From the NCBI RefSeq assembly GCF_001194135.2, contig NC_068987.1:4428003-4460054 (forward strand): a stretch of 32,052 bases of DNA. Reading direction: 5' to 3'. The translations under genes and the position numbers were made by a program. Below, one piece after another: positions 4,058 to 27,079 of the stretch. Below the pieces are notes generated by a model. It saw nothing but the letters and a program-made list of their open reading frames with translations, made no database searches and had not been told where the DNA came from. Origin of the DNA: Octopus bimaculoides. Its lineage: Eukaryota. Numbering within the stretch: position 1 is the stretch's first letter; each line of letters starts with the position of its first letter.

Positions 4058-4329
4058 TCACACCATATACACATATCTTTTAGTTTTAGATAAATTGTTA
4101 TCAATAAGCTTCATAGAACATGATAGTGAAAAGAGAACCCTCTTGTCAAAGTCCGTCAGGTTTCACCTAAAATTTTGTGCTTTGTCACTGTTGACACTCA
4201 TATCACAGTCAACATGATGTTGTGTGTCTTCTTAAAGTCACGACTAATATCTCTTATCGTTACATTATAATGTCGGCCGTTCATCTTCAATTTGCATAAT
4301 ATCATGATGAAATCTTCTGATGCAAACCA

Positions 4330-4680
4330 AATTTATTCATCTATGCTCAAGGTTACATACAGGCACAGAATCACAAACGCTAAAGTCCTGACAAGAGCCA
4401 ATCTGCACAGCCTGAGAAGGATTGTGGTGGAACGAAGAGTAAGACTTTCCACCTGCCAAAAGAAGAAATACCTAAGACAGCTATACAATGGGTCCCACCA
4501 GAAGGATGAAGGAAGAGACGGCAGACCCAAGAAGACATGGTTTGTCTTCTTCAAAGAAAATCTGAAGCAACTAAGCATCACCTGGGAATATACAGGTGAC
4601 TAAGCTCAAAACCCAAGATGACTGGAGATGTGTTGGCGCCTGATGTACAGACCATGGGAGGTCTGCATGGAATGCAGTAA
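4330..4680 (+). mobile_element. RTE-clade LINE relic, 3' end of the ORF, decayed
   Basis: Across frameshifts it translates as LKVTYRHRITNAKVLTRANLHSLRRIVVERRVRL / LPKEEIPKTAIQWVPPEG*RKR / GRPKKTW...FKENLKQLSITWE. This is the typical RTE C-terminal pattern (I-S/T-N-x-E-V-L ... W-x-P-x-G-x-R-x-x-G-R-P-K-K-T-W). Confidence 0.85.
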
Positions 4681-8689: not shown

Positions 8690-9425
8690 GTACTTATGGA
8701 TGTGGAGGTGATAGTGGTAATGGTGGAGGTGGTGGAGGTGCTAATGATGGTGGTGGTGGTGGAGGAGGAGGGTATAGAGTTGGTATTTTGTGAGTAAAGG
8801 GGGAAGTAAAGTTGTTGGCATTTATTTCATTGCCATAGCGATGGTAGTCATGGAGAAGTGCTGGTTAAGGCTCACATTACGATGGTGAGGCGGTTGTTAT
8901 TGTTATTTAGCCATGATTGAAGCCATTCCAACCATGACCATCCTGGCTTCTTTTTCTATATGCAGGGAACCAACCCAGGATTACATTATCCCTTTTTTTA
9001 TTCTTTTTGTAAAACAGTAGGTCGAGATTTCAGAAAGATTTGGCTGCCATGTCTAGCAGGCTGAGCAACTTTGCAGAGCTTNNNNNNNNNNNNNNNNNNN
9101 NNNNNNNNNNNNNNNNNNNNNNNNNNNNNNNNNNNNNNNNNNNNNNNNNNNNNNNNNNNNNGGTGGTGGTGGTGCTGGTGGTGCTGGTGGCAGTGTGCTA
9201 GTTGTGGTAATGGTGGTGGTGGTGGTGGTGGTGGAAGTGCACTAGTTATGGTGACAGTGGTGGTGGTACTGGTGGCAGTGTGCTAGTGATGGTGCTGGAA
9301 GTGGTGGTGGTGATGGTGGTAGTAGTAGTGGTGATGGTGGCAGTGGGCTAGTTATGGTGATGGTGGTGCTGGTGGAGGTAGCAACTGTTGTGGGGGTTGC
9401 AATGCATGATGGCGATGGTGGTGAA
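8690..9425. repeat. Degenerate (GGT)n-derived low-complexity tracts (8690-8770 and 9162-9425)
   Basis: GGT repeats with reiterated ggtggcagtgtgctagt and agttatggtga subunits. Confidence 0.8.
8910..9075 (-). mobile_element. Interspersed repeat family E
   Basis: The reverse complement shares ctgctaga.at.gcag.caaa, taat.ta.tcctggg and ggatggtcatgg with 24427-24595. Confidence 0.6.
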
Positions 9426-9810: not shown

Positions 9811-9812
<2 letters not shown>

Positions 9813-10045
9813 AGATTGGAGCCTGGGGCAGCCCCCTGGCTTGCCAGTCCTCAGTCAAGCTGTCCAACCCATGCCAGCATGGAAAGCGGATGCACCCACT
9901 ACACTCTCAGAGTGGTTGGCATTAGGAAGGGCATCCAGCTGTAGAAACTCTGCCAAATCAGATTGGAGCCTGGTGTAGCCATCTGGTTCACCAGTCCTCA
10001 GTCAAATCGTCCAACCCATGCTAGCATGGAAAGCGGATGTTAAAC
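9811..10045 (+). mobile_element. Family F, head-to-tail partial dimer
   Basis: tcagattggagcctgg...ggaaagcggatg occurs at 9811 and again at 9958 (147-bp offset). Confidence 0.85.
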
Positions 10046-10552
10046 NNNNNNNNNNNNNNNNNNNNNNNNNNNNNNNNNNNNNNNNNNNNNNNNNNNNNNN
10101 NNNNNNNNNNNNNNNNNNNNNNNNNNNNNNNNNNNNNNNNNNNNNNNNNNNNNNNNNNNNNNNNNNNNNNNNNNNNNNNNNNNNNNNNNNNNNNNNNNNN
10201 NNNNNNNNNNNNNNNNNNNNNNNNNNNNNNNNNNNNNNNNNNNNNNNNNNNNNNNNNNNNNNNNNNNNNNNNNNNNNNNNNNNNNNNNNNNNNNNNNNNN
10301 NNNNNNNNNNNNNNNNNNNNNNNNNNNNNNNNNNNNNNNNNNNNNNNNNNNNNNNNNNNNNNNNNNNNNNNNNNNNNNNNNNNNNNNNNNNNNNNNNNNN
10401 NNNNNNNNNNNNNNNNNNNNNNNNNNNNNNNNNNNNNNNNNNNNNNNNNNNNNNNNNNNNNNNNNNNNNNNNNNNNNNNNNNNNNNNNNNNNNNNNNNNN
10501 NNNNNNNNNNNNNNNNNNNNNNNNNNNNNNNNNNNNNNNNNNNNNNNNNNNN
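10046..10552. other. Largest assembly gap (others: 3844-3886, 5132-5141, 9082-9161, 18474-18492, 19125-19134, 21149-21510, 22387-22799, 29088-29416)
   Basis: Runs of N. Confidence 1.
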
Positions 10553-10811
10553 GGTTAAAATATATAATAGAGAAACAATTCTTAACCCTTTTGATACCAA
10601 CCTGGCTGAAACTGCCTCTGGCTCTGTAGTACAAATGTCTTGTTTTCAAAAGTTTTGAATTAAAATCTTCCACCAAACCTTAGTCACAATTTATGTTCCT
10701 AACACTAGCTTAATGATAACTAAGCTATTTTACCAAATTCTTTGTTATATTTAAAATTGATTGAAAGAAACACAGAGCATCTCAAAATAAATACGGTAAC
10801 AAAAGGGTTAA
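10553..10811 (-). mobile_element. piggyBac-type MITE (230 bp including both TTAA, 10582-10811), 23-bp spacer, and the terminus of a second copy entering the gap
   Basis: TTAA-CCCTTTTGATACC...GGTAACAAAAGGG-TTAA. TTAA target sites with CCC/GGG termini are the piggyBac signature. Confidence 0.85.
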
Positions 10812-10819
10812 GATTACAC

Positions 10820-11009
10820 CCATCCCCCTGCAGCAGAATGCTGGTCCATTCCAAGGCTAACTTCTCACCTAATACTGGCATTCATTTACAGCTGAATGCA
10901 CTGGAGCAACATGAGATGAAGTGTTTTGCTCAAGAACACAGTATGGGAATCGAAACCCCAATCTTACAATTGTGAGTTAAACAGCCTAACCACTAAGCCA
11001 CACACTTTC
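10820..11009 (-). mobile_element. tRNA-headed SINE family H
   Basis: actggagcaac...aagtgttttgctcaagaacac...gggaatcgaaacc...cctaaccactaagccac. A-box and B-box are on the minus strand. Confidence 0.8.
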
Positions 11010-11010
11010 C

Positions 11011-11210
11011 TTCTCTAAATATAAATACAGGGAAATAGAAATAGCAAGGAAGTGGAAGAAATATGGACACACAAACATCGTCTGTAAATATAGAAACATT
11101 GGAAAATAGAAAACTTGAAAAAATGCCAAGTAAACCTTTCATATGTGAAATTCAGAAGCCAGCGTTTCTAGGAAGTTGTCTTCTTTGCAGGAAAATATTA
11201 TCAATAAAGA
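11011..11210 (+). mobile_element. R4/Dong-like non-LTR retrotransposon relic (C-terminus of the restriction-like endonuclease region)
   Basis: FSKYKYREIEIARKWK, then after a frameshift MDTQTSSVNIETL...LEKMPSKPFICEIQKPAFLGSCLLCRKILSI. This follows the K-Y-x-D-L-x-x-E-I-x-R-M-W ... I-Q-K-x-A-x-L-G-T-x-x-I-L-R-K pattern of RLE elements. Confidence 0.7.
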
Positions 11211-11314
11211 GAAAATGGTTTATAACAAATTTATCTGTTCTACATTTCAGCTTGATGATGGCTGTGGTATAATATGTGCATCTTAAACAGTGTACAGTTT
11301 TATGATAATGTGTG

Positions 11315-11452
11315 TATGGATGTGTGGTTAAGAAATTTGTTTCCCAACCACATGGTTTTGGTTTCAGTCCCACTGTGTGCCACCTTCTGCTATAACTTCA
11401 GGCCAATCAAAGCCTTGTGAGTGGATGTGGTAGATGGAAACTGAAAGAAGCT
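11315..11452 (+). mobile_element. SINE family A, 5' module
   Basis: gtgtggttaagaaatttgtttcccaaccacatggttttggtttcagtcccactg...gccttgtgagtggatgtggtagatggaaactgaaagaagc. Confidence 0.85.
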
Positions 11453-11504
11453 TGTTGTGTGTGTGTGTGTGTGTGTGTGTGAGACAGAGAGAGAGAGTGT
11501 GTAT

Positions 11505-11672
11505 TTTATTTGTGGGTTAACTAAGCTACCAACGGTTTCATGTAACAGAAATCTCTTAGCAATTATCAACCCTGCCATGAGTATTAACGTTTGCTTGTGG
11601 CAGAGTTGATAATTGTTAAGAGATACCTGTTTACCTGAAACCATTGGTAGCCTAATTAACCAGACAAATAAA
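11505..11672. other. Single-copy long hairpin (about 77-nt arms, 12-nt loop)
   Basis: 11505-11581 is the reverse complement of 11594-11672 at roughly 85% identity. Confidence 0.9.
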
Positions 11673-11824
11673 GAATATTTATCCTCCAATGCGGTGTTGA
11701 GCACTCATTCTCACTTAGCGTGCAGCACCCTAACCATTAGGTCATGCTACCTTCACACACACATACGCATGTGAAGTGTATACCGTGATATCACATGATA
11801 GCTGTAAAAAGGAAGTATCCTTCA

Positions 11825-11975
11825 TTTCCAATATTCTGTGAGAACGTCTGGTTACTGGGAAATATCATCTTGCTTGGAAACAGTCGAAGGTTGGTGACAG
11901 GAAGAGCATCTGGCTGTAGAAAAGTTGCTTCAGTAAATCTGCATCTGACCCATTTAAGCAAAGAAAAGTGGGTGC
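11825..11975 (+). mobile_element. Family G retroelement
   Basis: gtctggttactgggaaatatcatcttgcttggaaac...ggttggtgacaggaagagcatctggctgtagaaaa...ctgacccat. Confidence 0.7.
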
Positions 11976-12220
11976 CACTTTGGCGTGTGATCTACAATTT
12001 AAAGGGAGATTACTGTAGGTTACTTTTTAGTTTACTTTGTGTTACTGCTACTTTGCTGTGTGATCTACATGAGCAAATTTTCTTTGGTGGGTGATCTGTA
12101 TGCTTTTTTTTAATTATTGTATTGTTTATTTTTGGTTTCTTATTATTATTTACTAAGACATAAATAAAACATAGTTTTCTTATCACCAAAACAGTAAGAA
12201 TTTTGAAGAAAATACATTTG

Positions 12221-12650
12221 CAATGGGCTTCCACACAGTTTCTTATTTCTTTACTGCCCACAAGGGGCTAAACATAGAGGATACAAACAAGGACAGACAA
12301 AGGGGTTAAGTTGATTATATTGACCCCCAGTGTGTAACTGGTACTTAATTTATCAACCCCGAAAGGATGAAATGCAAAGTCGACCTCGGCGGAATTTGAA
12401 CTCAGAGCGTAACGGCAGACGAAATACTGCTAAGCATTTTGCCCGACGGGGGTAACGTTTCTGCCAGCTCGCTGCCTTTCACACAGTTTCTACTAACCAA
12501 ATCTACTCACAGGGCATTGGTTGGCCTGGGGGCTATAATAGTAGACACTTGCCCGAGCTATAATGGTATACACTTGACCTCATTTTGACTGAACCAAAAA
12601 CTAAATGATTACATAGTGAGCTTCTTAACCACACAGCCATGCCTGCACCT
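12221..12650 (-). mobile_element. SINE family A variant, interrupted by a family C SINE
   Basis: After removing the insert, caatgggcttccacacagtttctactaaccaaatctactcacagggcattggttggc... matches the reverse complement of 28060-28115. Confidence 0.8.
12244..12479 (-). mobile_element. SINE family C, full length, with 12-bp TSD cacacagtttct
   Basis: Minus strand has gagctggcagaaacg...gagttcaaattccgccgaggtcgactttgcatttcatcctttcggggttgataaattaagtaccag. The TSD is at 12232-12243 and 12480-12491. From memory the central domain resembles Sauria/MetaSINE-type domains (unverified). Confidence 0.9.
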
Positions 12651-13332
12651 CCAAAGAAAATGCTGAAGATGTAGTTCCTCACAGAATTATGAGGCTGTAA
12701 AGTAAAAGTCTCATCACTTGTTATAGAATTTTAGACATTTTTTAGTTCATTAATTAGTCTCTATGCAAAAACTTTAAAAGCTGCATTCCACCGAGACTAA
12801 AAAAAACCTCTGAAATTCATAAATTAAATTTCTAGTCTTTAGGTTAAAGTTTACTTAATGTCATGAGATCATGTGGTAAATAACAGATAAAAATCATTAA
12901 TTCTGAAATATTGTAAGATTGTATACAAACCTTCGACCTGACAGAAAAACTAAGGCAACTCAAATATGAAACTTTATCCTCAAACAAATAATTCTCTTGA
13001 GGTATTCAACAGACTTTAGCACATAATAAACCAGACTAACTCTGGAGAATTATATAGAGTTGGGTATTTGTTACACTGGGGTGTATCTGTTTAAACAGTT
13101 TAATAATACCTGCACCACGCTGGAGAAAACTTGCTCTATAGTACACATGCTTTACTCAACTGCCTATAAAAACAAATATTTATATAAAAAAGAAAGAAAG
13201 ATCTAAGCATTTATAAATCAACTCCAGTCTATCAAATTGACTAACTTCCATGTCTGTGTTTTGGTTTAGATTTTGAATGTTATAAGCTTATCACCATTTA
13301 ATGTCCATTTTCCATATTAGCATGGGTTAGAA

Positions 13333-13400
13333 CTGTGGTTTTCAACCAGGGTTCATATGACCCATTAGGGTCCATGTAAGATTTTGTTGATAAAAATTTA
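13333..13400 (+). mobile_element. hAT-like MITE terminus (family J)
   Basis: ctgtggttttcaaccagggttcatatgacccattagggtcc is CAGTGGTTTTCAACC-like. A second copy is at 31440. Confidence 0.55.
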
Positions 13401-13452
13401 TCTGCAAGAAATCAGTTCCACTTCTACAATGCACAAAATATTTTAACAGCGT

Positions 13453-13632
13453 GACAGTGTGGCAAGGCTGGCCCTTTCAAATACAGGTCCTACTCATTTT
13501 TGCCAGCTGAGTGAACTGGAGCAACGGGAAATAAAGTGTCTTGCTCAAGGACACAATGCGTCGCCAGGAATTGAACTAGTGATCTTATGATCATGAGTTG
13601 AATGCCTTAACCACTAAGCCACACACCTTCAC
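13453..13632 (-). mobile_element. tRNA-headed SINE family H
   Basis: gctgagtgaactggagcaacgggaaataaagtgtcttgctcaaggacacaatgcgtcgccaggaattgaact...taaccactaagccac. Confidence 0.85.
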
Positions 13633-13902
13633 AATGTTGGCAATATGTATTAAACAAATCCTGATGACACAAAAGACATTCTCGAAGCCTTAAATTGCTT
13701 AAATACATTAAAAGACATTAAGTTTTGGAAAACTTTTAGTAAAGGTCCATGGCCCATAGAGAACACTCTCTCCATTGAGCACTTGTTGCTGATCCCTGAT
13801 CTAAAGAGAGGACTTTCAAGTATGAAACCCATTAATTAAAAGCGGGGCACATACATTTATTACATATTAGTATAACTTAGAGTATTATTTTTTTAAATAA
13901 TG

Positions 13903-13952
13903 CTCTATCTCTCTCTCTCTATCTCTCTCTCTCTCTATCTCTCTTTCTCTCT

Positions 13953-14008
<56 letters not shown>

Positions 14009-14025
14009 TTCTCTCTCTCTCTCAC
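13903..14025. repeat. (CT)n microsatellite
   Basis: Visible repeat. Confidence 0.95.
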
Positions 14026-14036
14026 ACACATACGTA

Positions 14037-14226
14037 ATCATCATCATCATCGTTTAATCTGTTTTCCATTCTAGCATGGGTTGGATGGCTTAACAGGAGC
14101 TGACAATACAAAAGACCAAGGCATGTCCGAATGTCTGCTCCTGGCATGGCATCTACAGCTGGATGCCCTTCATAACACCAACCACTTCACCGAGTGTACT
14201 GGGTGCTTTTTACTTGGTACAGGCAC
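14037..14226 (-). mobile_element. Family F retroelement
   Basis: (atc)n gtttaatctgttttccattctagcatgggttggat...ctacagctggatgcccttcataacaccaacc...gggtgcttttac. Confidence 0.85.
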
Positions 14227-14619
14227 ATATGTATATATATATATATGTATATACTTTATTAATAGTAATCATACTCTTGACAAGAGTGGGTGGACGAGGT
14301 GTCCAATTGCTAGGTTTCCATTACACGCTGTCATGTGCACACAGATACATCTAAATAGACGTTGATAAAATACTGTGTTTGGTGAAGTGGTTGAAAACCT
14401 CCTCCAGCGGTGCAGCTCAATGCATTTCAAAAGTGCAGCTTACCATCTTACTGAGAACTGATAATTAAGAAGAGACAGTAGCATTTTCTAAAAGGTGCAG
14501 CTGACTATTAATAGAGCTGAATAATTCAGGAGATATAATTAGGTGGAGGGCAGCGGAGATACTTAAAAGATTTTGATAGCTTATGCAAACCTTGTTTGTT
14601 CTCAGAGGAACTGTGACAG

Positions 14620-14827
14620 AAATTTTGGTTTCAAATTTTGGCACAAGGCCAGCAACTTCAGGGGAGGGAGGGGGTAAGTCGATTATATCAACCCAGTGTT
14701 TGACTAGCACTTATTTTATCAATCCTGAAAGGATGAAGGGCAAAGTCAGCGCAAAGGCATTTAAACTCAGAATGCAAAACTAAGCATCTCACCTGGCATG
14801 CTAACAATTCTAATATCTCATTACCTT
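14620..14827 (-). mobile_element. SINE family C variant
   Basis: ggcacaaggcc...gtcgattatatcaacccag...ttttatcaatcctgaaaggatgaagggcaaagtc...aactcagaa. Confidence 0.75.
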
Positions 14828-14976
14828 CTGAGACGGAAATATTTAAGACTCAACATTCTCTTATCATCATTATATTATCATCATCTTCATGACTTGGGTG
14901 GAGCTGGTAGCATCTCACCACTAATCAAGGCTTCTCTCACCTGCAAGTCTATCTTTGTTGTTGTGTGATTGTTTTC

Positions 14977-15459
14977 TTAACTCTTTCGTTACCATATTTC
15001 TGTTGAGATCCTCAGTGTTTCTTTCAATTAATTTTAAATATAACAAAGAATTTAGTAAAATAACCTAGTTATCATTCAGCTAGTGTTAGGAACATAAATT
15101 GTGACTAAGGTTTGGTGGAAGATTTTAATTCAGAACTTATGAAAACAAGACATTTGTACTACAGAGCCAGAGACAGTTTCAGCCAGGTTGGTATCGAAAT
15201 GGTTAAGAATTGTTTTTCTATTATATATTTTAACTCTTTTTTTACCCTATTTCTGTTGAGATGCTCTGTCTTTCTTTCAATTAATTTTAAATATAACAAA
15301 GAATTTAGTAAAATAACTTAGTCATCATTAAGCTAGTGTTAGGAACATAAGTTGTGACTAAGGTTCGGTGGAAGATTTTGACGTAGAACTTTTGAAAACA
15401 AGACATTTGTACTACAGAGCCAGAGGCAGTTTCAGCTGGAATGGTAATGAAAGGGTTAA
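14977..15459 (+). mobile_element. Tandem dimer of the piggyBac-type MITE (14977-15206 and 15230-15459) with a 23-bp spacer
   Basis: Two 230-bp units, each bounded by TTAA. The spacer gaattgtttttctattatatatt occupies 15207-15229. Confidence 0.9.
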
Positions 15460-18616: not shown

Positions 18617-19106
18617 CAGGGTGCGATGGGTAAATTGTCGCCACTTTATATTTTTTTAATTTTGCACATGTGCATTGTTTACTTTTGATTTTGTTGACTA
18701 CACAGTATAGTAGGGTCAGTTAGGCACCGTCTGTGAGAAAAACAGCACCATGATGCAGTTCACTCTGCCAGGAATTTGGAAACGACATGCTGTACTGCTT
18801 GGCATTTGTGCTGGAATCTCCAATATGAACAGATGGTGAACATATGGAACAACCATTGGCTTGCTCTGGCCCCAAAACATGTACCGAGAGTGATGAAAAT
18901 TAAACATCCAGTCAACATCATGGTGTTTGGAGTGATCACTAGTGATGGCAACATTATGCCTCCATTCATCTTCTCACACCACGTCAGATTCAACACAGAG
19001 GCCTATATCAAGTGCCTAATTTTGGTAAATATATCTGATAAAATGAGATGTCAATGTTATTTTCATCTTTGCGTAATTTAGATGACAGTTTATTCACCAC
19101 ACCCTG
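18617..19106 (+). mobile_element. Internally deleted Tc1/mariner element (maT/DD37D-like), both TIRs, TA target duplication
   Basis: Left end TA-CAGGGTGCGATGGGTAAATTGTC; right end (reverse complement) TA-CAGGGTGTGGTGAATAAACTGTC. Retains the N-terminus MMQFTLPGIWKRHAVLLGICAG (ATG at 18750) and a catalytic-domain piece WLALAPKHVPRVMKIKHPVNIMVFGVITSDGNIMPPFIF...FNTEAYIKCL. Confidence 0.85.
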
Positions 19107-21700: not shown

Positions 21701-21924
21701 ACATGCATATATGAATATATACCAACACAATGTCTCTGTAAAAATGTGTTTACACGTATTTGTATGTGTGAGTGTGTGTGTGTGTTTGTAAGTGTCTGTA
21801 TGTTATCGGTGGGTGTATATATCGTTTTTCTAACACTGTAATCTCTGTGGTTGGTATGTGTCTATGAAAGCACAGAAATGTATATGTGTGTATATATTAT
21901 ACATACATTTGATATACAAACAAT

Positions 21925-22275
21925 TTGCACTTCTTTCTCTCTCTCTCCTCATTCCTCCTTTCACCTATTCACTCCTCCCCAGCTCCCCTCTCTCTTCTCT
22001 GGCCTCTCTTTCTCTCTTGCTTTGCCCCCCTCCTATCTTTCTCTTTCTCTCTCTCCCTCCTTCTTCCTCTCCCTCTCTCTCTCTTCCACCTCTCACTCTT
22101 ACTCTCCTTTCCCTTCCACCTCTCACTCTTACTCTCCTTTCCCTCTCTTTTCTCATCTCTCTCTCTCACTCTTTCCCCCTCTTTCTCACCCCTTCCCCCT
22201 TTCTCTCTTTCTCTCTCTCTTTTCCTCCTCTTTCTCTTTCTAGCTTGCTTCCCTTTCATTTCTCTCTCTCCCCTA
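21925..22275. repeat. CT-rich low-complexity tract
   Basis: Visible; source of the Ser/Leu/Pro ORFs. Confidence 0.9.
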
Positions 22276-23876
22276 CTTTTTCTTCACCCCCCCCCAAACA
22301 CTCCAATAGACCCCACCCCACTTTCCAGCTCCCTCCCCAAGGGGTATGGTGATGGGTGGGACCACTTATATGGAATGGAGTGGAGTNNNNNNNNNNNNNN
22401 NNNNNNNNNNNNNNNNNNNNNNNNNNNNNNNNNNNNNNNNNNNNNNNNNNNNNNNNNNNNNNNNNNNNNNNNNNNNNNNNNNNNNNNNNNNNNNNNNNNN
22501 NNNNNNNNNNNNNNNNNNNNNNNNNNNNNNNNNNNNNNNNNNNNNNNNNNNNNNNNNNNNNNNNNNNNNNNNNNNNNNNNNNNNNNNNNNNNNNNNNNNN
22601 NNNNNNNNNNNNNNNNNNNNNNNNNNNNNNNNNNNNNNNNNNNNNNNNNNNNNNNNNNNNNNNNNNNNNNNNNNNNNNNNNNNNNNNNNNNNNNNNNNNN
22701 NNNNNNNNNNNNNNNNNNNNNNNNNNNNNNNNNNNNNNNNNNNNNNNNNNNNNNNNNNNNNNNNNNNNNNNNNNNNNNNNNNNNNNNNNNNNNNNNNNNC
22801 ATCATTAGCACTGGCACCACCACCATCACCAACGTGACCACCACCACCACCACTGACAACATCCTTTCCAGTTTGTAACCCTGGCTGAGATGAAGGTGTT
22901 GCACTTAAGCAGCCTCCAGCTGAACACCAAAACACTGCCACCCCCACCCCACCACCCCTCCACACCCAACCAATAACAACAACAACAGCAACAACCACCC
23001 TACATCTAACCTGACGCTAAACATTTACCATCTTCTTCTTTCTCATTTTCTTCTTTCTCTTCTTCTTCTTTCTCATTTTCTTCTTTCTTGTCTTCTTCTT
23101 TCTCTTCTTCTTCCCCTTCTCCTTCTTTTTACCCTTCTTCTCTCTCGTCTTCTTCCCCTTCTTTTCCCCTTCTTCTCCTCCCTCCTCCACCATAATCCTT
23201 TACCTTCTTCATTGCCTTCTTATATTGGAATTCCTTCTTGTACAACCCCCACCACCACCACCACCACCAACAACAGCAACAACAATAACAACAGGAATGT
23301 CATCCAATACCAGCACCTTACCACCACCATTTTCAGCACCAGCATCATCAACACTATCATCATAATCACCACCACCATCACCACTACTTTTGCACCCACC
23401 TAACCCTTGATCTAAGATGTTACACAAAATCACCCCCCACCCTCTCACTGCCCGCCACTTACTCGGTTGAGGTGGTGGGGATGGGGGGGTTAGTTTTTTT
23501 TTGGGGGGGGGATAAAAGAAGGAAAGGAAGTTGGGAGCAGGGAGAGGGAAAGGGGTTTAGGGCCTTGAAAGTGAATTACACAAGGTAACTTTATCCCTGT
23601 TTTGGGAAAGCAAATGTAAATAAATATACAAATTGCCCCTCGCCTTCCCCTCCCCCCGCCTCGGCTGCTCCCATCTTCTCATCTTTCTCTTCGTCTCTTC
23701 CTCCAGCCTTTCTCTGTCTTTCTCCTCCTCCTCCTCCTTCTCCCTTGGTGCACTCCCTACCATTTCATAACCACCAGCGCCAGACCTGCCGTATCTATAT
23801 CAACACACCATCAGAATCACAACCACCAGTTATACCATCAGCACAACTGCCATGCAACCACAATGAGCTTCTGTAT

Positions 23877-23940
23877 CAGTCATGGCCAAACTGCGGCCCC
23901 GGGCCTCATGGGGCCCATGGCACTTTCTGAATGACCTGCC
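23877..23940 (+). mobile_element. hAT/Charlie-like MITE left terminus
   Basis: cagtcatggccaaactgcggccccgggcctcatggggccc resembles CAGGGGTCGGCAAACT.CGGCCCGCGGGCC termini. No right end was found. Confidence 0.5.
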
Positions 23941-24057
23941 TAACAAAACATTAAACCTTGATTGCTTTTAATTAATGCAGCCGGCCTCATGAGCCATGTC
24001 TCATCCGGCAGCCCACTTCTCAGATGTTGTTTATGTCTGTTCTACATTATCATTAGT

Positions 24058-24430
24058 AGAGGTGCAATGGCCCAGTGGTTAGGGCAGCAGACTCACGGTC
24101 ATAGAATCGCGGTTTCGATTCCCAGACCTGGCTTTGTGAGTGTTTATTGAGCGAAAAAACCTAAAGCTCCATGAGGCTCCAGCAGGGGCTGGTGGCAAAC
24201 CCTGCTGTACTCTTTTACCACACAACTTTCTCTCACTCTTTCTTCCTGTTTCTCTTGCACCTGTATTTCAAAGGGTCAGCCTTGTCACACTCTGTGTCAC
24301 GCTGAATCTCCCCGAGAATTACGTTAACGGTACATGTGTCTATGGAGTACTCAGCCACTTTTACGTTAATTTCACAAGCAGACTGTTCCGTTGATTGGAT
24401 CAACTGGAACCCTCATCGTCATCGTAACCG
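24058..24430 (+). mobile_element. tRNA-derived SINE, a distinct family with a well-preserved head
   Basis: A-box TGGCCCAGTGG (24068-24078) and B-box GGTTTCGATTCC (24111-24122), followed by a non-tRNA body. It could be one of the octopus OK/OR1/OR2 families; I cannot assign which. Confidence 0.75.
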
Positions 24431-24595
24431 ATACATGATCCTTTATCTTGCTAGAAATAGCAGTCAAACTTCCCACACATTACACACACTCCCACCTTTA
24501 TAGGAAAGAATACCCAGGTTAATATAGTCCTGGGTTCTTCAACACTATAGTAAATAACACGGGATGGTCATGGATGGGATTCGTTTGATCACATG
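24427..24595 (+). mobile_element. Interspersed repeat family E
   Basis: Related to the reverse complement of 8910-9075. Confidence 0.6.
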
Positions 24596-24889
24596 GGTTT
24601 ACTTAATCAAGGCTGGCCTGGGGCCATTCAACAACAACACCAACCTCCAATATGGACAATAATCCCACCGTCACCACCACCATCTCCATATCGTCCTACC
24701 TTCCCCTCTCTTCTGTCACCACCACCACCATCAGCATCTTCACACCTTTCCTCCTTGCTCTCCTGCTCTCTACCACCATCACCACCACCACCACCATTTC
24801 TTCCCACCCTTCCTATCCCTCTCTCCTCCCACCGCTACTCTACTTTGGAATCTTATATAAACCATTCAGTGATTGAAAACATTTCAATG

Positions 24890-25175
24890 TTCTTCTTCTT
24901 AGTCTTTGTCTTCTTCTTTCTTCTTTCTTCTTCTTCTTTTTCTCCTTCTTCTTCTTCTTCTTTCTTCTTTCTTCTTCTTCTCCTTCTCCTTCTCCTTCTC
25001 CTTCTTCTCCTTCTCCTTCTTCTTCTTCTTCTTCTTCTTTCTCTTTTTCTTCTTCTTCTGCTTCTCTAAATTCTTCTTCTCCCAATTCTTCTTTCCTTCT
25101 TTTTCTTCTTCTTCTTCTCCTCCTCCTCCTTCTCCTTCTTCTTCTTCTCCTCCTCCTCCTTCTCCTTCTTCTTCT
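24890..25175. repeat. (TTC)n/(TCC)n microsatellite
   Basis: Visible repeat; a similar tract lies at 23030-23190. Confidence 0.95.
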
Positions 25176-27079
25176 AAAACAAACCCAAAATGAAACCCAA
25201 CACAGAATCCAATGTTACCAGGTCATAGGATAAGACTGTGTTTTTGCTTATTATTGACTTTGGGCTAATCTCTCTCCTTTTACTTTCTCTCATAAATCTT
25301 CTTGTCATTGTTGCTGTTCGTTCTTCACTTTCTACTTCTCTCATCTTTCTCTCTTCTCCTCTTTATCCATTCCTCTGGATTCCTTTCTCTTCTTCTTTGC
25401 CTAACATTTTTTCCAGTTCTTTTTTCAAATTTACTTGTTTTTTTTCTTCTTCTTTTATCCTTTATTATTCCTTCTTCAAGTCCCCTTCCTCTTCTGCTTC
25501 ATGTCCTCCTTCTGTTCTGTCTCATGTCCTCTTTATCCTCTTCATGATAATACAGGTATGTTTTAACAAGTCTCAAAAGTCACTGTTTCAATAAGAAAGG
25601 AATATATTTAATACACAATTGTACTCTCAGAGAAAAGGGCAGTGCACACAACCCTTTCATTTTCAAAGCCTTTGAGACATCAGGAACTTTTATCCTCCAA
25701 CCTGAGACCAGATCTTGAATGCTTGCAATAAAATAAACTCAACTAAATGCATTCAAAATCCAAGATGTGGTGATAAACAGATTTGCTTAATCCCTTAATC
25801 TCTTGTGGAGTGGAAGCCATTGATGACTTTCCTTCAATGTTCTCAAAAAGTATTAAATTCCAAGTGTTACAAGCACTACCATATTCGTTCTTAATGTTCC
25901 AGAAGTTTCAAATGCTAATATATTCATCACAGCTGTGTTTTGTCACAAGAGAACAGCTTCTCCTTTATGACGAGTGTCTGTTCATAACACCATTCTATTC
26001 ATTAGCATAAGGGAATCGGGGACAACCTGTGTTCCAGCATTGTTGTGTCTCATCAGCCCAACATACCACCCACCTCTGGACTAACAACTCTAATTGTTAA
26101 ATAAACTGAAATTACTGTTATTTAAATGGCAGGACTGTTTTGATTTGAGTAGACTGACATTTTTCTAAGCAGCTGTTACTTTCATTCACCTCATGCAGTG
26201 ATTCCACGATGGAAAAAAAAGCACAAGTGATTATATAAAACTCTCGCTCCTCATAGGAAGGAAGAGCAGTTTGTTTGGTTTCTAAATAAATTGTTACAGA
26301 AGTTAGTAAACATTGATATTAATATTACTAAGAGATAATCCATTAAATAAATATGTCTCTTTTCTCCTTTCTTTTCTCTCACTTCCATGTTTACTCGCCT
26401 CTCAGTCAGTCAAGCCAATCACCTCCCCACATGCATTTCGTTTTTTCTCTCATTCAACATAGCTTGTTTCCTTCGTCTTTATTCTTCTATCATCTTTTAG
26501 TCAGTCTATCAATTTTTCTAATCTGTTGATGCATATATCAACCTACAAATCTGCACTTAGTTCCATTCATATCTCATTTATCTCTGTATTGATAGCCATA
26601 CACATATATATATATATATGTGTGTAGAGAGAGAGCTAGAGAAAGAGAGAGAGAGAGAGACAGACAGAGAGAGAGAAGATCCATACCTTTATATAATGTT
26701 TATATTTCATATAAATCTGTATACATATCACTCCTATCTGTCCATCTGTATTTATATGTTATCATTTCTCTTAAGTACACATCTATCTGTGAGTACATGT
26801 GTGTGTGTGTGTGCAATCTTACTATCTCACTTATAATTCAAACAAAATAATATATATATATATATTTATATTAGATTTTTATGATCAAATGACTGCTGGG
26901 ACTTTTAAGTAATATGCATAATACGCATGACTAAATTGTCATAAACATTCATGTCTATTGACATAGTGTTTGATTGGTCACCTGCATGTTGAAACAATTG
27001 TAAACCATAGAGTAAATGTAACGCCATAGACTTCAGTCTTCACATGTGTGTGTGAGAGCCTTTATGTCATGTCTCTGTT

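What the first reader, a model, noticed from the sequence alone, without database searches (positions are those of the whole stretch)
10553..15459. piggyBac-type MITE dimer apparently mobilised as a composite, present twice in inverted orientation with the same 23-bp spacer
Seen: at 14977-15459 the structure is TTAA-MITE-TTAA, gaattgtttttctattatatatt, TTAA-MITE-TTAA. At 10553-10811 the minus strand gives MITE-TTAA, gaattgtttctctattatatatt (22/23 identical), then TTAACC running into the gap. The outer flanks are unrelated, so the shared unit stops exactly at the MITE end. The first units share ccaggttggtatc yet differ at many positions, which argues against assembly duplication. Established: piggyBac uses TTAA sites and CCC/GGG termini. 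Inference: two neighbouring insertions captured the DNA between them and now move together via the outer ends, like a composite transposon carrying cargo. The inverted pair also brackets about 4.2 kb of SINEs, a LINE relic and a hairpin, and could form long dsRNA.
Basis: partly seen in the sequence, partly recalled or inferred. Interest (0 to 1): 0.7.

Follow-up and report, generated by a model that had tools for sequence, protein, structure and literature searches.

The report
Decayed piggyBac-type MITE dimer, copied twice
Two small non-coding "cut-and-paste" transposon relics sit head-to-tail with the same 23-base filler at two nearby places in an animal genome, which most likely means the pair once moved as one unit; this is an ordinary, already described kind of transposon behaviour.

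Summary
At 14977-15459 two 230-nt units (TTAA + 222 nt + TTAA) lie head to tail around a 23-nt spacer. At 10553-10811, on the minus strand, there is one unit, the same spacer (22/23) and TTAACC, then a 507-N gap. The unit has piggyBac hallmarks: TTAA at every visible end and 13-nt inverted ends CCCTTTTGTTACC / GGTATCAAAAGGG. The spacer match cannot be chance (about 4e-11). Homology stops exactly at the TTAA on the one outer side visible at both loci. Locus B is exactly a dimer; its flanks are not spacer-like.

The best reading is a dimer copied as a unit, most simply by transposase acting on the outermost ends (macrotransposition). That reading rests on two copies only. They lie 4.15 kb apart, and one is cut by a gap. 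No tool gave access to the rest of this genome, so copy number, empty sites and the second unit at locus A stay untested. Repair-mediated copying and other local events remain open.

Both copies are old (7.4% apart), and locus B has damaged ends. Tandem piggyBac MITEs, MITE-plus-flank mobile units and macrotransposons are all published. This is a new member of a known kind, of low to moderate interest.

The parts
10046..10552 (.). Assembly gap (507 N). It hides the rest of the predicted second unit (A2) and the far flank of copy A.
10553..10558 (-). Stub of unit A2: TTAA (10558->10555) followed by CC (10554->10553). This is the first 2 nt of a canonical CCC terminus.
   Evidence: chance of TTAAC[C/T] about 1e-3
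10559..10581 (-). Spacer, copy A: gaattgtttctctattatatatt (22/23 identical to copy B).
10582..10811 (-). Unit A1: TTAA + 222 nt + TTAA. Inverted ends are CCCTTTTGTTACC (10807->10795) and GGTATCAAAAGGG (10598->10586), 12/13 complementary. It has the best-preserved termini of the three units.
10812..14976 (.). 4165-bp interior between the two inverted copies. It contains old SINE copies (about 10851-11010, 13297-13632, 14057-14190 and 12309-12406 / 14677-14771), microsatellites and a hairpin at 11544-11631. It shows no homology between its two ends.
14977..15206 (+). Unit B1: TTAA + 222 nt + TTAA. Both termini are damaged: CTCTTTCGTTACC at 14981-14993 and GGTATCGAAATGG at 15190-15202.
15207..15229 (+). 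Spacer, copy B: gaattgtttttctattatatatt.
15230..15459 (+). Unit B2: TTAA + 222 nt + TTAA. Termini are CTCTTTTTTTACC (15234-15246) and GGTAATGAAAGGG (15443-15455). It carries 15 private differences, 10 of them in three clusters.

Best explanation
The repeat is a non-autonomous, non-coding piggyBac-superfamily element (a MITE of 222 nt, inserted at TTAA). At some locus two copies came to lie head to tail, 23 nt apart. Most likely these were two separate insertions into neighbouring TTAA sites, because unit 2 differs from unit 1 by clustered, subfamily-like changes.

That arrangement has a left end at one extremity and a right end at the other. A piggyBac-type transposase supplied in trans could therefore cut at the two outermost ends and move the 483-nt block (unit + spacer + unit) as one piece. 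This is a macrotransposon, or composite. One such event, probably a short-range hop, left a second copy 4.15 kb away in the opposite orientation.

Both copies have since decayed and are fossils. They differ by 7.4%, and copy B has lost the terminal CCC in both units and the GGG in unit 1.

Shown: the anatomy, the shared spacer, and the sharp boundary at one outer end. Inferred: that the transposase did the copying, that unit A2 is complete, and which locus is the donor.
For: - TTAA at every visible unit end, and 13-nt inverted ends starting CCC / ending GGG. PMC2872659 names exactly this combination as the piggyBac hallmark.
- The same 23-nt spacer at both loci (22/23), followed by TTAAC[C/T]; chance is about 4e-11 and 1e-3.
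- Spacer divergence (1/23) fits the unit-1 divergence (17/230; 1.7 mismatches expected), so the spacer and unit 1 were copied together.
- Homology ends exactly at the TTAA on the unit-1 side. No flank similarity lies beyond it.
- Locus B is bounded by TTAA on both sides, and its flanks are not spacer-like (scores 7-8 against a null 95th percentile of 9). So the dimer was not made in place by tandem duplication at B.
- Branch lengths of 8 (A1), 8 (B1) and 15 (B2) fit a clock-like tree in which the U1/U2 split predates the A/B split.
- The copies differ from each other, so neither is an assembly duplicate.
- Precedents exist. Ac macrotransposons excise and reinsert (PMC9910405). En-bloc 'macrotransposition' of tandem P copies has been proposed (PMC1562414). 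In corals, a piggyBac MITE plus flanking DNA moves via outer TTAAs (PMC2872659).
Against: - Only two copies are seen, and they are neighbours.
- The far half of copy A, including its second outer boundary, is in a gap. A complete second unit and an unrelated flank on that side are assumed, not seen.
- For piggyBac the target duplication is always TTAA, so it cannot show that the outer pair of ends was the pair used.
- The excess of A1=B1 sites over A1=B2 sites (15 versus 8) is not significant (p = 0.105), and the 15 are clustered.
- At position 6 (the second base of the terminus) A1 and the A2 stub both have C, while B1 and B2 both have T. That pattern follows the locus, not the unit, and needs a parallel change or a conversion within a locus.
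- No empty site, autonomous partner or further copy could be examined.
Confidence: 0.55

Rival explanations
1. Template-directed repair, not transposition of the block. A solo MITE, or a break left by its excision, at one locus was repaired using the nearby dimer as template. One broken end paired with unit 1 and the other with unit 2, so unit + spacer + unit was copied in (ectopic gene conversion, or synthesis-dependent strand annealing).
For: - It gives the same product: a dimer with the shared spacer, TTAA at both ends and unrelated flanks.
- The two loci are only 4.15 kb apart, which favours ectopic repair.
- The locus-specific state at position 6 (C in A1 and the A2 stub, T in B1 and B2) shows that some conversion-like process may act on these units.
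Against: - It needs a pre-existing solo insertion at exactly that site, plus a rarer repair outcome.
- Repair tracts often leave mosaic patterns. A1 versus B1 differences are spread along the unit with no obvious tract.
- There is no direct evidence either way.
Confidence: 0.15
2. A local inverted duplication or other rearrangement that did not use the MITE ends. Its breakpoint merely coincides with, or was later trimmed to, the MITE boundary. Copy A may be incomplete.
For: - The copies are adjacent and inverted, as fold-back duplications are.
- Half of copy A is unseen.
- The flank next to A1 is itself an old SINE, and the region is full of later insertions.
Against: - Homology stops to the base at the TTAA next to unit 1. 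The next 40 nt score at background.
- A random breakpoint would hit that exact base with probability of the order of 1 in several hundred.
- The two ends of the interior share nothing.
Confidence: 0.1
3. A dispersed short tandem array, the seed of a satellite, rather than a fixed dimer. The mobile or expanding unit is [MITE + 23 nt] repeated n times, and the gap at locus A hides more than one further period.
For: - The period is 253 nt and the gap is 507 N, room for two periods.
- Assembly breaks are typical at tandem repeats.
- Tandem arrays of whole piggyBac MITEs with repeated inter-unit gaps exist in corals (PMC2872659).
- MITE-to-satellite transitions are known in bivalves and Xenopus.
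Against: - Locus B has exactly two units, and neither flank resembles the spacer.
- Gap lengths in scaffolds are estimates.
- This reading would still need block mobilisation, or the repair route, to reach two loci.
Confidence: 0.1
4. An assembly artefact. The last 29 nt of the contig at 10553-10581 were added by mis-extension through a repeat, and locus A really carries a solo MITE.
For: - The junction at A sits at the very end of a contig, next to a gap.
- The assembly is fragmented, with nine gaps in 32 kb.
Against: - The A junction differs from the B junction at 2 of 29 positions (C/T in the spacer; TTAACC versus TTAACT), so it was not built from locus-B reads.
- If the reads came from a third locus, that would itself be another dimer copy.
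Confidence: 0.05

Closest known systems
piggyBac-superfamily MITEs (TTAA-specific non-autonomous elements), for example the coral CMITEs of Acropora (PMC2872659)
   Same: - TTAA target duplication.
- Short inverted ends of 13-14 nt beginning CC[C/T]T.
- Small, non-coding and AT-rich.
- CMITEs also occur as tandem arrays with conserved inter-unit gaps, and as CMITE-IN, a MITE plus flanking DNA that moves via outer TTAAs.
   Different: - The unit here is 222 nt against about 100 nt.
- It has no detectable sequence relation to any described family. That could not be tested against Repbase or Dfam.
- In corals the arrays were ascribed to replication slippage in place. Here the same dimer is at two loci, and locus B lacks the flank signature of in-place duplication.
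Macrotransposons: two closely linked Ac/Ds or P elements that move together with the DNA between them (Huang and Dooner 2008, cited in PMC9910405; the P-element case is in PMC1562414)
   Same: - Two elements of one family sit in direct orientation.
- The outermost left and right ends act as one transposon.
- The intervening host DNA is carried along.
- The copy number of the composite can rise.
   Different: - Those cases belong to the hAT or P superfamily, carry kilobases of cargo, and for Ac were shown genetically.
- Here it is a piggyBac-type MITE pair with 23 nt of cargo.
- It is inferred from two fossil copies.
Bacterial composite transposons (Tn5 and Tn10 type)
   Same: - Two copies of a small element bracket captured DNA and mobilise it through their outer ends.
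   Different: - The IS elements encode their own transposase.
- They are often inverted.
- They carry genes. Here the units are non-autonomous, direct, and carry nothing functional.
MITE-derived tandem repeats and satellites (clam DTC84, PMC3879986; Xenopus Xstir; oyster and bivalve MITE-related satellites listed in PMC6947457)
   Same: - MITE sequence in head-to-tail repeats, dispersed at several loci.
   Different: - In those cases the tandem repeats are usually internal modules between one pair of ends, or form long arrays.
- Here there are two complete elements, each with its own ends and its own TTAA pair.

Membership tests
piggyBac-superfamily non-autonomous element (MITE) | TTAA target-site duplication at both ends of each element | tested here: met
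   TTAA is present at all six unit ends of A1, B1 and B2, and before the A2 stub.
piggyBac-superfamily non-autonomous element (MITE) | Terminal inverted repeats of about 12-19 nt beginning CC[C/T]T and ending in the complement (PMC2872659) | tested here: met
   A1 has CCCTTTTGTTACC / GGTATCAAAAGGG, 12/13 complementary. B1 and B2 carry point-mutated versions (CTCT......ATGG in B1).
piggyBac-superfamily non-autonomous element (MITE) | Small size and no coding capacity | tested here: met
   The unit is 222 nt, with stops in all frames. The only longer frame (70 aa across the junction) has no relative in 5.8 billion proteins.
piggyBac-superfamily non-autonomous element (MITE) | Many copies at unrelated sites | tested here: inconclusive
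   There are three units at two loci in 32 kb and none elsewhere in the window.
piggyBac-superfamily non-autonomous element (MITE) | An autonomous piggyBac in the same genome with matching ends; empty sites showing precise TTAA restoration | not testable with these tools
   No genome or related genome is available, and no paralogous empty site lies in the window. A repeat survey of an octopus genome lists piggyBac families (PMC13282606), but the source organism of this window was not established.
Composite / macrotransposon (dimer mobilised through its outer ends) | Two elements in direct orientation bracketing captured DNA, giving one left and one right outer end | tested here: met
   B1 and B2 are head to tail around the 23-nt spacer.
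Composite / macrotransposon (dimer mobilised through its outer ends) | The same composite at two or more loci, with homology ending at both outer ends | tested here: inconclusive
   The unit-1 side is sharp, ending at the TTAA with unrelated flanks. The unit-2 side of copy A lies in the 507-N gap.
Composite / macrotransposon (dimer mobilised through its outer ends) | A target duplication specific to the composite, or an empty site showing the whole block absent | not testable with these tools
   A piggyBac duplication is always TTAA and so carries no information here. No other haplotype or species is available.
Tandem array made in place (replication slippage or unequal exchange of MITE + flank) | The inter-unit spacer recurs at an edge of the array (flank = spacer) | tested here: not met
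   The 40 nt before B1 and the 40 nt after B2 score 8 and 7 against the spacer. The null 95th percentile is 9.
Segmental inverted duplication | Homology continues beyond the repeat into the flanking DNA | tested here: not met
   No similarity appears beyond the TTAA on the unit-1 side. The inverted-repeat arms end within 7 nt of it at background identity. The other side is unseen.

The most novel reading that the evidence does not exclude
The 483-nt dimer is not a one-off. It could be a family of its own, with many copies across the genome: a MITE pair that became the preferred substrate of a piggyBac transposase and spread as a unit. In that case it would catch a MITE in the act of turning into a longer element or a dispersed tandem repeat. 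Inverted pairs such as this one would then supply long, near-perfect double-stranded RNA arms (258 nt, about -359 kcal/mol) inside transcripts.
Probability: 0.12. Interest if true: 0.4.

Novelty: new member of a known kind. Interest (0 to 1): 0.2.

Why it matters
If the dimer did move as a block, it is a small natural example, for the piggyBac superfamily, of a known process. Two neighbouring non-autonomous elements fuse into a longer mobile unit and carry host DNA with them. That process is one proposed route to new MITE families, to MITE-derived tandem repeats and to gene or enhancer shuffling.

The example is modest. The captured DNA is 23 nt, the copies are decayed, and the principle has been shown for Ac/Ds and P elements and described for coral piggyBac MITEs. 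The nearby inverted pair could promote inversion of the 4.2 kb between the copies, or form double-stranded RNA if transcribed. Neither effect was tested.

Tried and rejected
1. Other copies in public collections. Exact-pattern scans with a 32-nt and a 22-nt conserved core and with the degenerate junction found nothing in JGI metagenome contigs or IMG/VR. These collections evidently hold no DNA of this organism.
2. Copies through their spurious reading frame. The 70-aa frame that runs across unit 1, spacer and unit 2 has no word-sharing relative among 5.8 billion proteins.
3. Reaching other loci of the same genome through transposon-derived proteins.
   - The Tc1/mariner-like relic (18737-19078) gave no hit.
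   - The LINE tail relic (4271-4600) gave nine weak hits in the representative library.
   - The closest of these (P0005) exists only on three Logan contigs of 1.8 kb or less, 78% identical to the window over 137 nt. That is useless as a genome sample.
4. Exact look-up of ten window ORFs, in the hope of another assembly with the gap closed. None is in the collection.
5. A paralogous 'empty site' in the window. The SINE next to A1 and the flanks of B have no alignable uninterrupted copy across the insertion points.
6. Tandem duplication in place at B. Rejected, because the flanks are not spacer-like.
7. Simple inverted segmental duplication. Rejected for the visible side, which has no flank homology.
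8. A hairpin-type MITE. Rejected: the unit folds no better than shuffles (z = +1.2), and only the 13-nt ends pair.
9. Structured RNA or tRNA. No Rfam family and no tRNA anywhere in the window.
10. Literature search for the sequences themselves. Only unrelated primer matches came back.
11. The tool refuses frames with stops, so this was left unverified.
12. The organism. The SINE tails recall cephalopod (octopus) repeats from memory only. Nothing here confirms it.


Full report
**What is in the sequence**

The window is repeat-dense, AT-rich (about 62% A+T) animal-type DNA with nine assembly gaps.

At 14977-15459 on the + strand the structure is:
- TTAA, a 222-nt body, TTAA (unit B1, 14977-15206)
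- 23 nt, gaattgtttttctattatatatt (15207-15229)
- TTAA, a 222-nt body, TTAA (unit B2, 15230-15459)

At 10553-10811 on the minus strand the structure is:
- one unit (A1, 10811->10582)
- the spacer gaattgtttctctattatatatt (10581->10559), 22 of 23 identical to B
- TTAA (10558->10555)
- CC (10554->10553)
- a run of 507 N

Pairwise identities are 92.6% for A1-B1, 89.6% for A1-B2 and 89.6% for B1-B2. BLAST with short words and a profile HMM built from the three units find no further copy in the 32 kb.

**Is it more than chance?**

At the window's base composition, a 22/23-or-better match at a fixed position has probability about 4e-11. The TTAAC[C/T] that follows has probability about 1e-3. One mismatch in 23 nt is what the 7.4% divergence of unit 1 predicts (1.7 expected). 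The spacer therefore has the same age as the A1/B1 split.

**What the unit is**

- Each unit is bounded by TTAA on both sides.
- The best-preserved copy (A1) has 13-nt inverted ends, CCCTTTTGTTACC and GGTATCAAAAGGG, 12/13 complementary.
- TTAA duplications plus 12-19-nt ends beginning CC[C/T]T are the stated hallmarks of the piggyBac superfamily and its MITEs (PMC2872659).
- The unit has stops in all frames.
- The single-stranded unit folds no better than shuffled sequence (z = +1.2). Only the ends pair.
- No Rfam family or tRNA is present.

It is a piggyBac-type MITE. The autonomous partner, the copy number and empty sites could not be examined.

**How the two loci relate**

On the side where both loci can be read (next to unit 1), similarity stops at the TTAA. 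The 40 nt beyond score at background, and BLAST finds nothing else shared. That argues against an ordinary inverted segmental duplication.

At locus B, neither the 40 nt before B1 nor the 40 nt after B2 resembles the spacer. They score 8 and 7 against a null 95th percentile of 9. B is therefore exactly a dimer. It was not produced in place by slippage or unequal exchange of 'MITE + flank', which would leave the spacer repeated at an edge.

Variable sites among the three units split as follows:
- 8 private to A1
- 8 private to B1
- 15 private to B2
- 1 three-way

This fits a clock-like history in which the U1/U2 split predates the A/B split. Ten of the 15 B2-private changes fall in three clusters, which looks like a subfamily difference. 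That mildly favours two independent insertions as the origin of the dimer. The excess of A1=B1 over A1=B2 sites (15 versus 8) is not significant on its own (one-sided p = 0.105). The spacer, not the unit sequence, carries the argument.

One detail does not fit neatly. At the second base of the terminus, A1 and the A2 stub have C while B1 and B2 have T. That pattern follows the locus rather than the unit.

**Artefact?**

The A junction lies at a contig end. It differs from the B junction at 2 of 29 positions, and A1 differs from B1 at 17 of 230. It was therefore not assembled from locus-B reads. If the reads came from a third locus, that would be yet another dimer.

**Most likely mechanism**

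A head-to-tail pair has a left end at one extremity and a right end at the other. That is a proper substrate for a transposase supplied in trans. The simplest account has three steps:
1. Two insertions landed in TTAA sites 23 nt apart.
2. The 483-nt block was then mobilised through its outer ends, probably over a short distance.
3. Both copies decayed.

Copy B has lost the terminal CCC in both units and the GGG of unit 1, and that terminal motif is needed for piggyBac transposition (PMC2872659). These are fossils. I put this account at about 0.55.

**Rivals**

| Rival | Probability | Comment |
|---|---|---|
| Copying of the dimer into a site with a solo MITE, or a break, by homology-directed repair | 0.15 | Gives the same product |
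| A local rearrangement whose breakpoint coincides with the MITE end, with copy A incomplete | 0.10 | |
| A dispersed array of more than two periods | 0.10 | The 507-N gap would hold two 253-nt periods, but gap sizes are estimates and B has exactly two units |
| Contig-end mis-extension | 0.05 | |

**What could not be done**

The decisive test is a genome-wide census of the junction. It was impossible because none of the searchable collections holds this genome:
- DNA pattern scans were empty.
- The frame spanning the junction has no protein relative.
- Transposon relics from the window led only to three short Logan contigs.
- No window ORF is on record.
- No paralogous empty site exists in the window.

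The source organism was not established. A resemblance of the SINE tails to octopus repeats is from memory only. A recent repeat survey of Octopus vulgaris does list piggyBac families and MITEs (PMC13282606).

**Comparison with what is known**

- Tandem arrays of whole piggyBac MITEs with conserved gaps were described in Acropora corals. So was a derived element in which a MITE plus flanking DNA moves via outer TTAAs (PMC2872659).
- En-bloc 'macrotransposition' of two neighbouring P copies was proposed as a source of new MITEs in Anopheles (PMC1562414).
- Ac macrotransposons have been shown to excise and reinsert in maize (PMC9910405).
- MITE-related tandem repeats are well known in bivalves and Xenopus.

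The present case works like a macrotransposon and belongs to the piggyBac MITE class. It adds an instance, not a principle.

**The dsRNA remark**

If one transcript crossed both arms, 258 nt would pair with about -359 kcal/mol. Whether such a transcript exists is unknown, and any inverted repeat pair would do the same.

**Verdict**

This is a new member of a known kind, with interest about 0.2.

Noticed in passing
window 10553-10554, 10806, 14982, 15235: At the second base of the MITE terminus, A1 and the A2 stub both have C (the canonical CCC). B1 and B2 both have T (CTC). The state follows the locus, not the unit, which hints at conversion between the two units of a dimer or at a parallel mutation.
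   Followed up: partly
window 9811-9892 and 9958-10045: Two partial copies of a SINE tail (...ccaacccatgcyagcatggaaagcggatg...), 87% identical and 147 nt apart, run into the same gap from the left. The same tail recurs inverted at 13297-13331 and 14057-14094. The gap therefore also hides the end of a SINE, not only the predicted MITE unit.
   Followed up: partly
window 11544-11631: A perfect-looking hairpin: 34-nt arms, 88% complementary, with a 20-nt loop, inside the 4.2-kb interior. Its nature is unknown; it may be another small inverted-repeat element.
   Followed up: no
window 10851-11010 and 13297-13632: tRNA-derived SINE copies on the minus strand (head gtgtgtggcttagtggtt...ggttcgattcc-like). 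The first one abuts the TTAA of A1, but its tail does not align with the other copy, so it gave no empty-site evidence.
   Followed up: yes
window 18737-19078 (+): A stop-free 114-aa frame with a Tc1/mariner-like transposase C-terminal pattern (...VNIMVFGVITSDGNIMPPFIF...FNTEAYIKCL). It is a degenerate relic, and the word-indexed protein search gave no hit.
   Followed up: partly
window 4271-4600 (+): A LINE 3' tail relic (...ITNAKVLTRANL...GRPKKTW...). It has weak matches (E 6e-6 to 9e-4) to reverse-transcriptase tails. One 591-aa hit carries a full RT. A similarly decayed copy lies on Logan contigs of runs SRR11869384, SRR11869390 and SRR11869391.
   Followed up: partly
window 21800-25600: A long, strongly strand-asymmetric, C/T-rich low-complexity stretch (GC skew down to -0.66) with two gaps. 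It produces long spurious S/L/P-rich reading frames.
   Followed up: no
window 9162-9379: A (GGT)n-based minisatellite with higher-order periods of 41 and 65 nt, directly after a gap.
   Followed up: no
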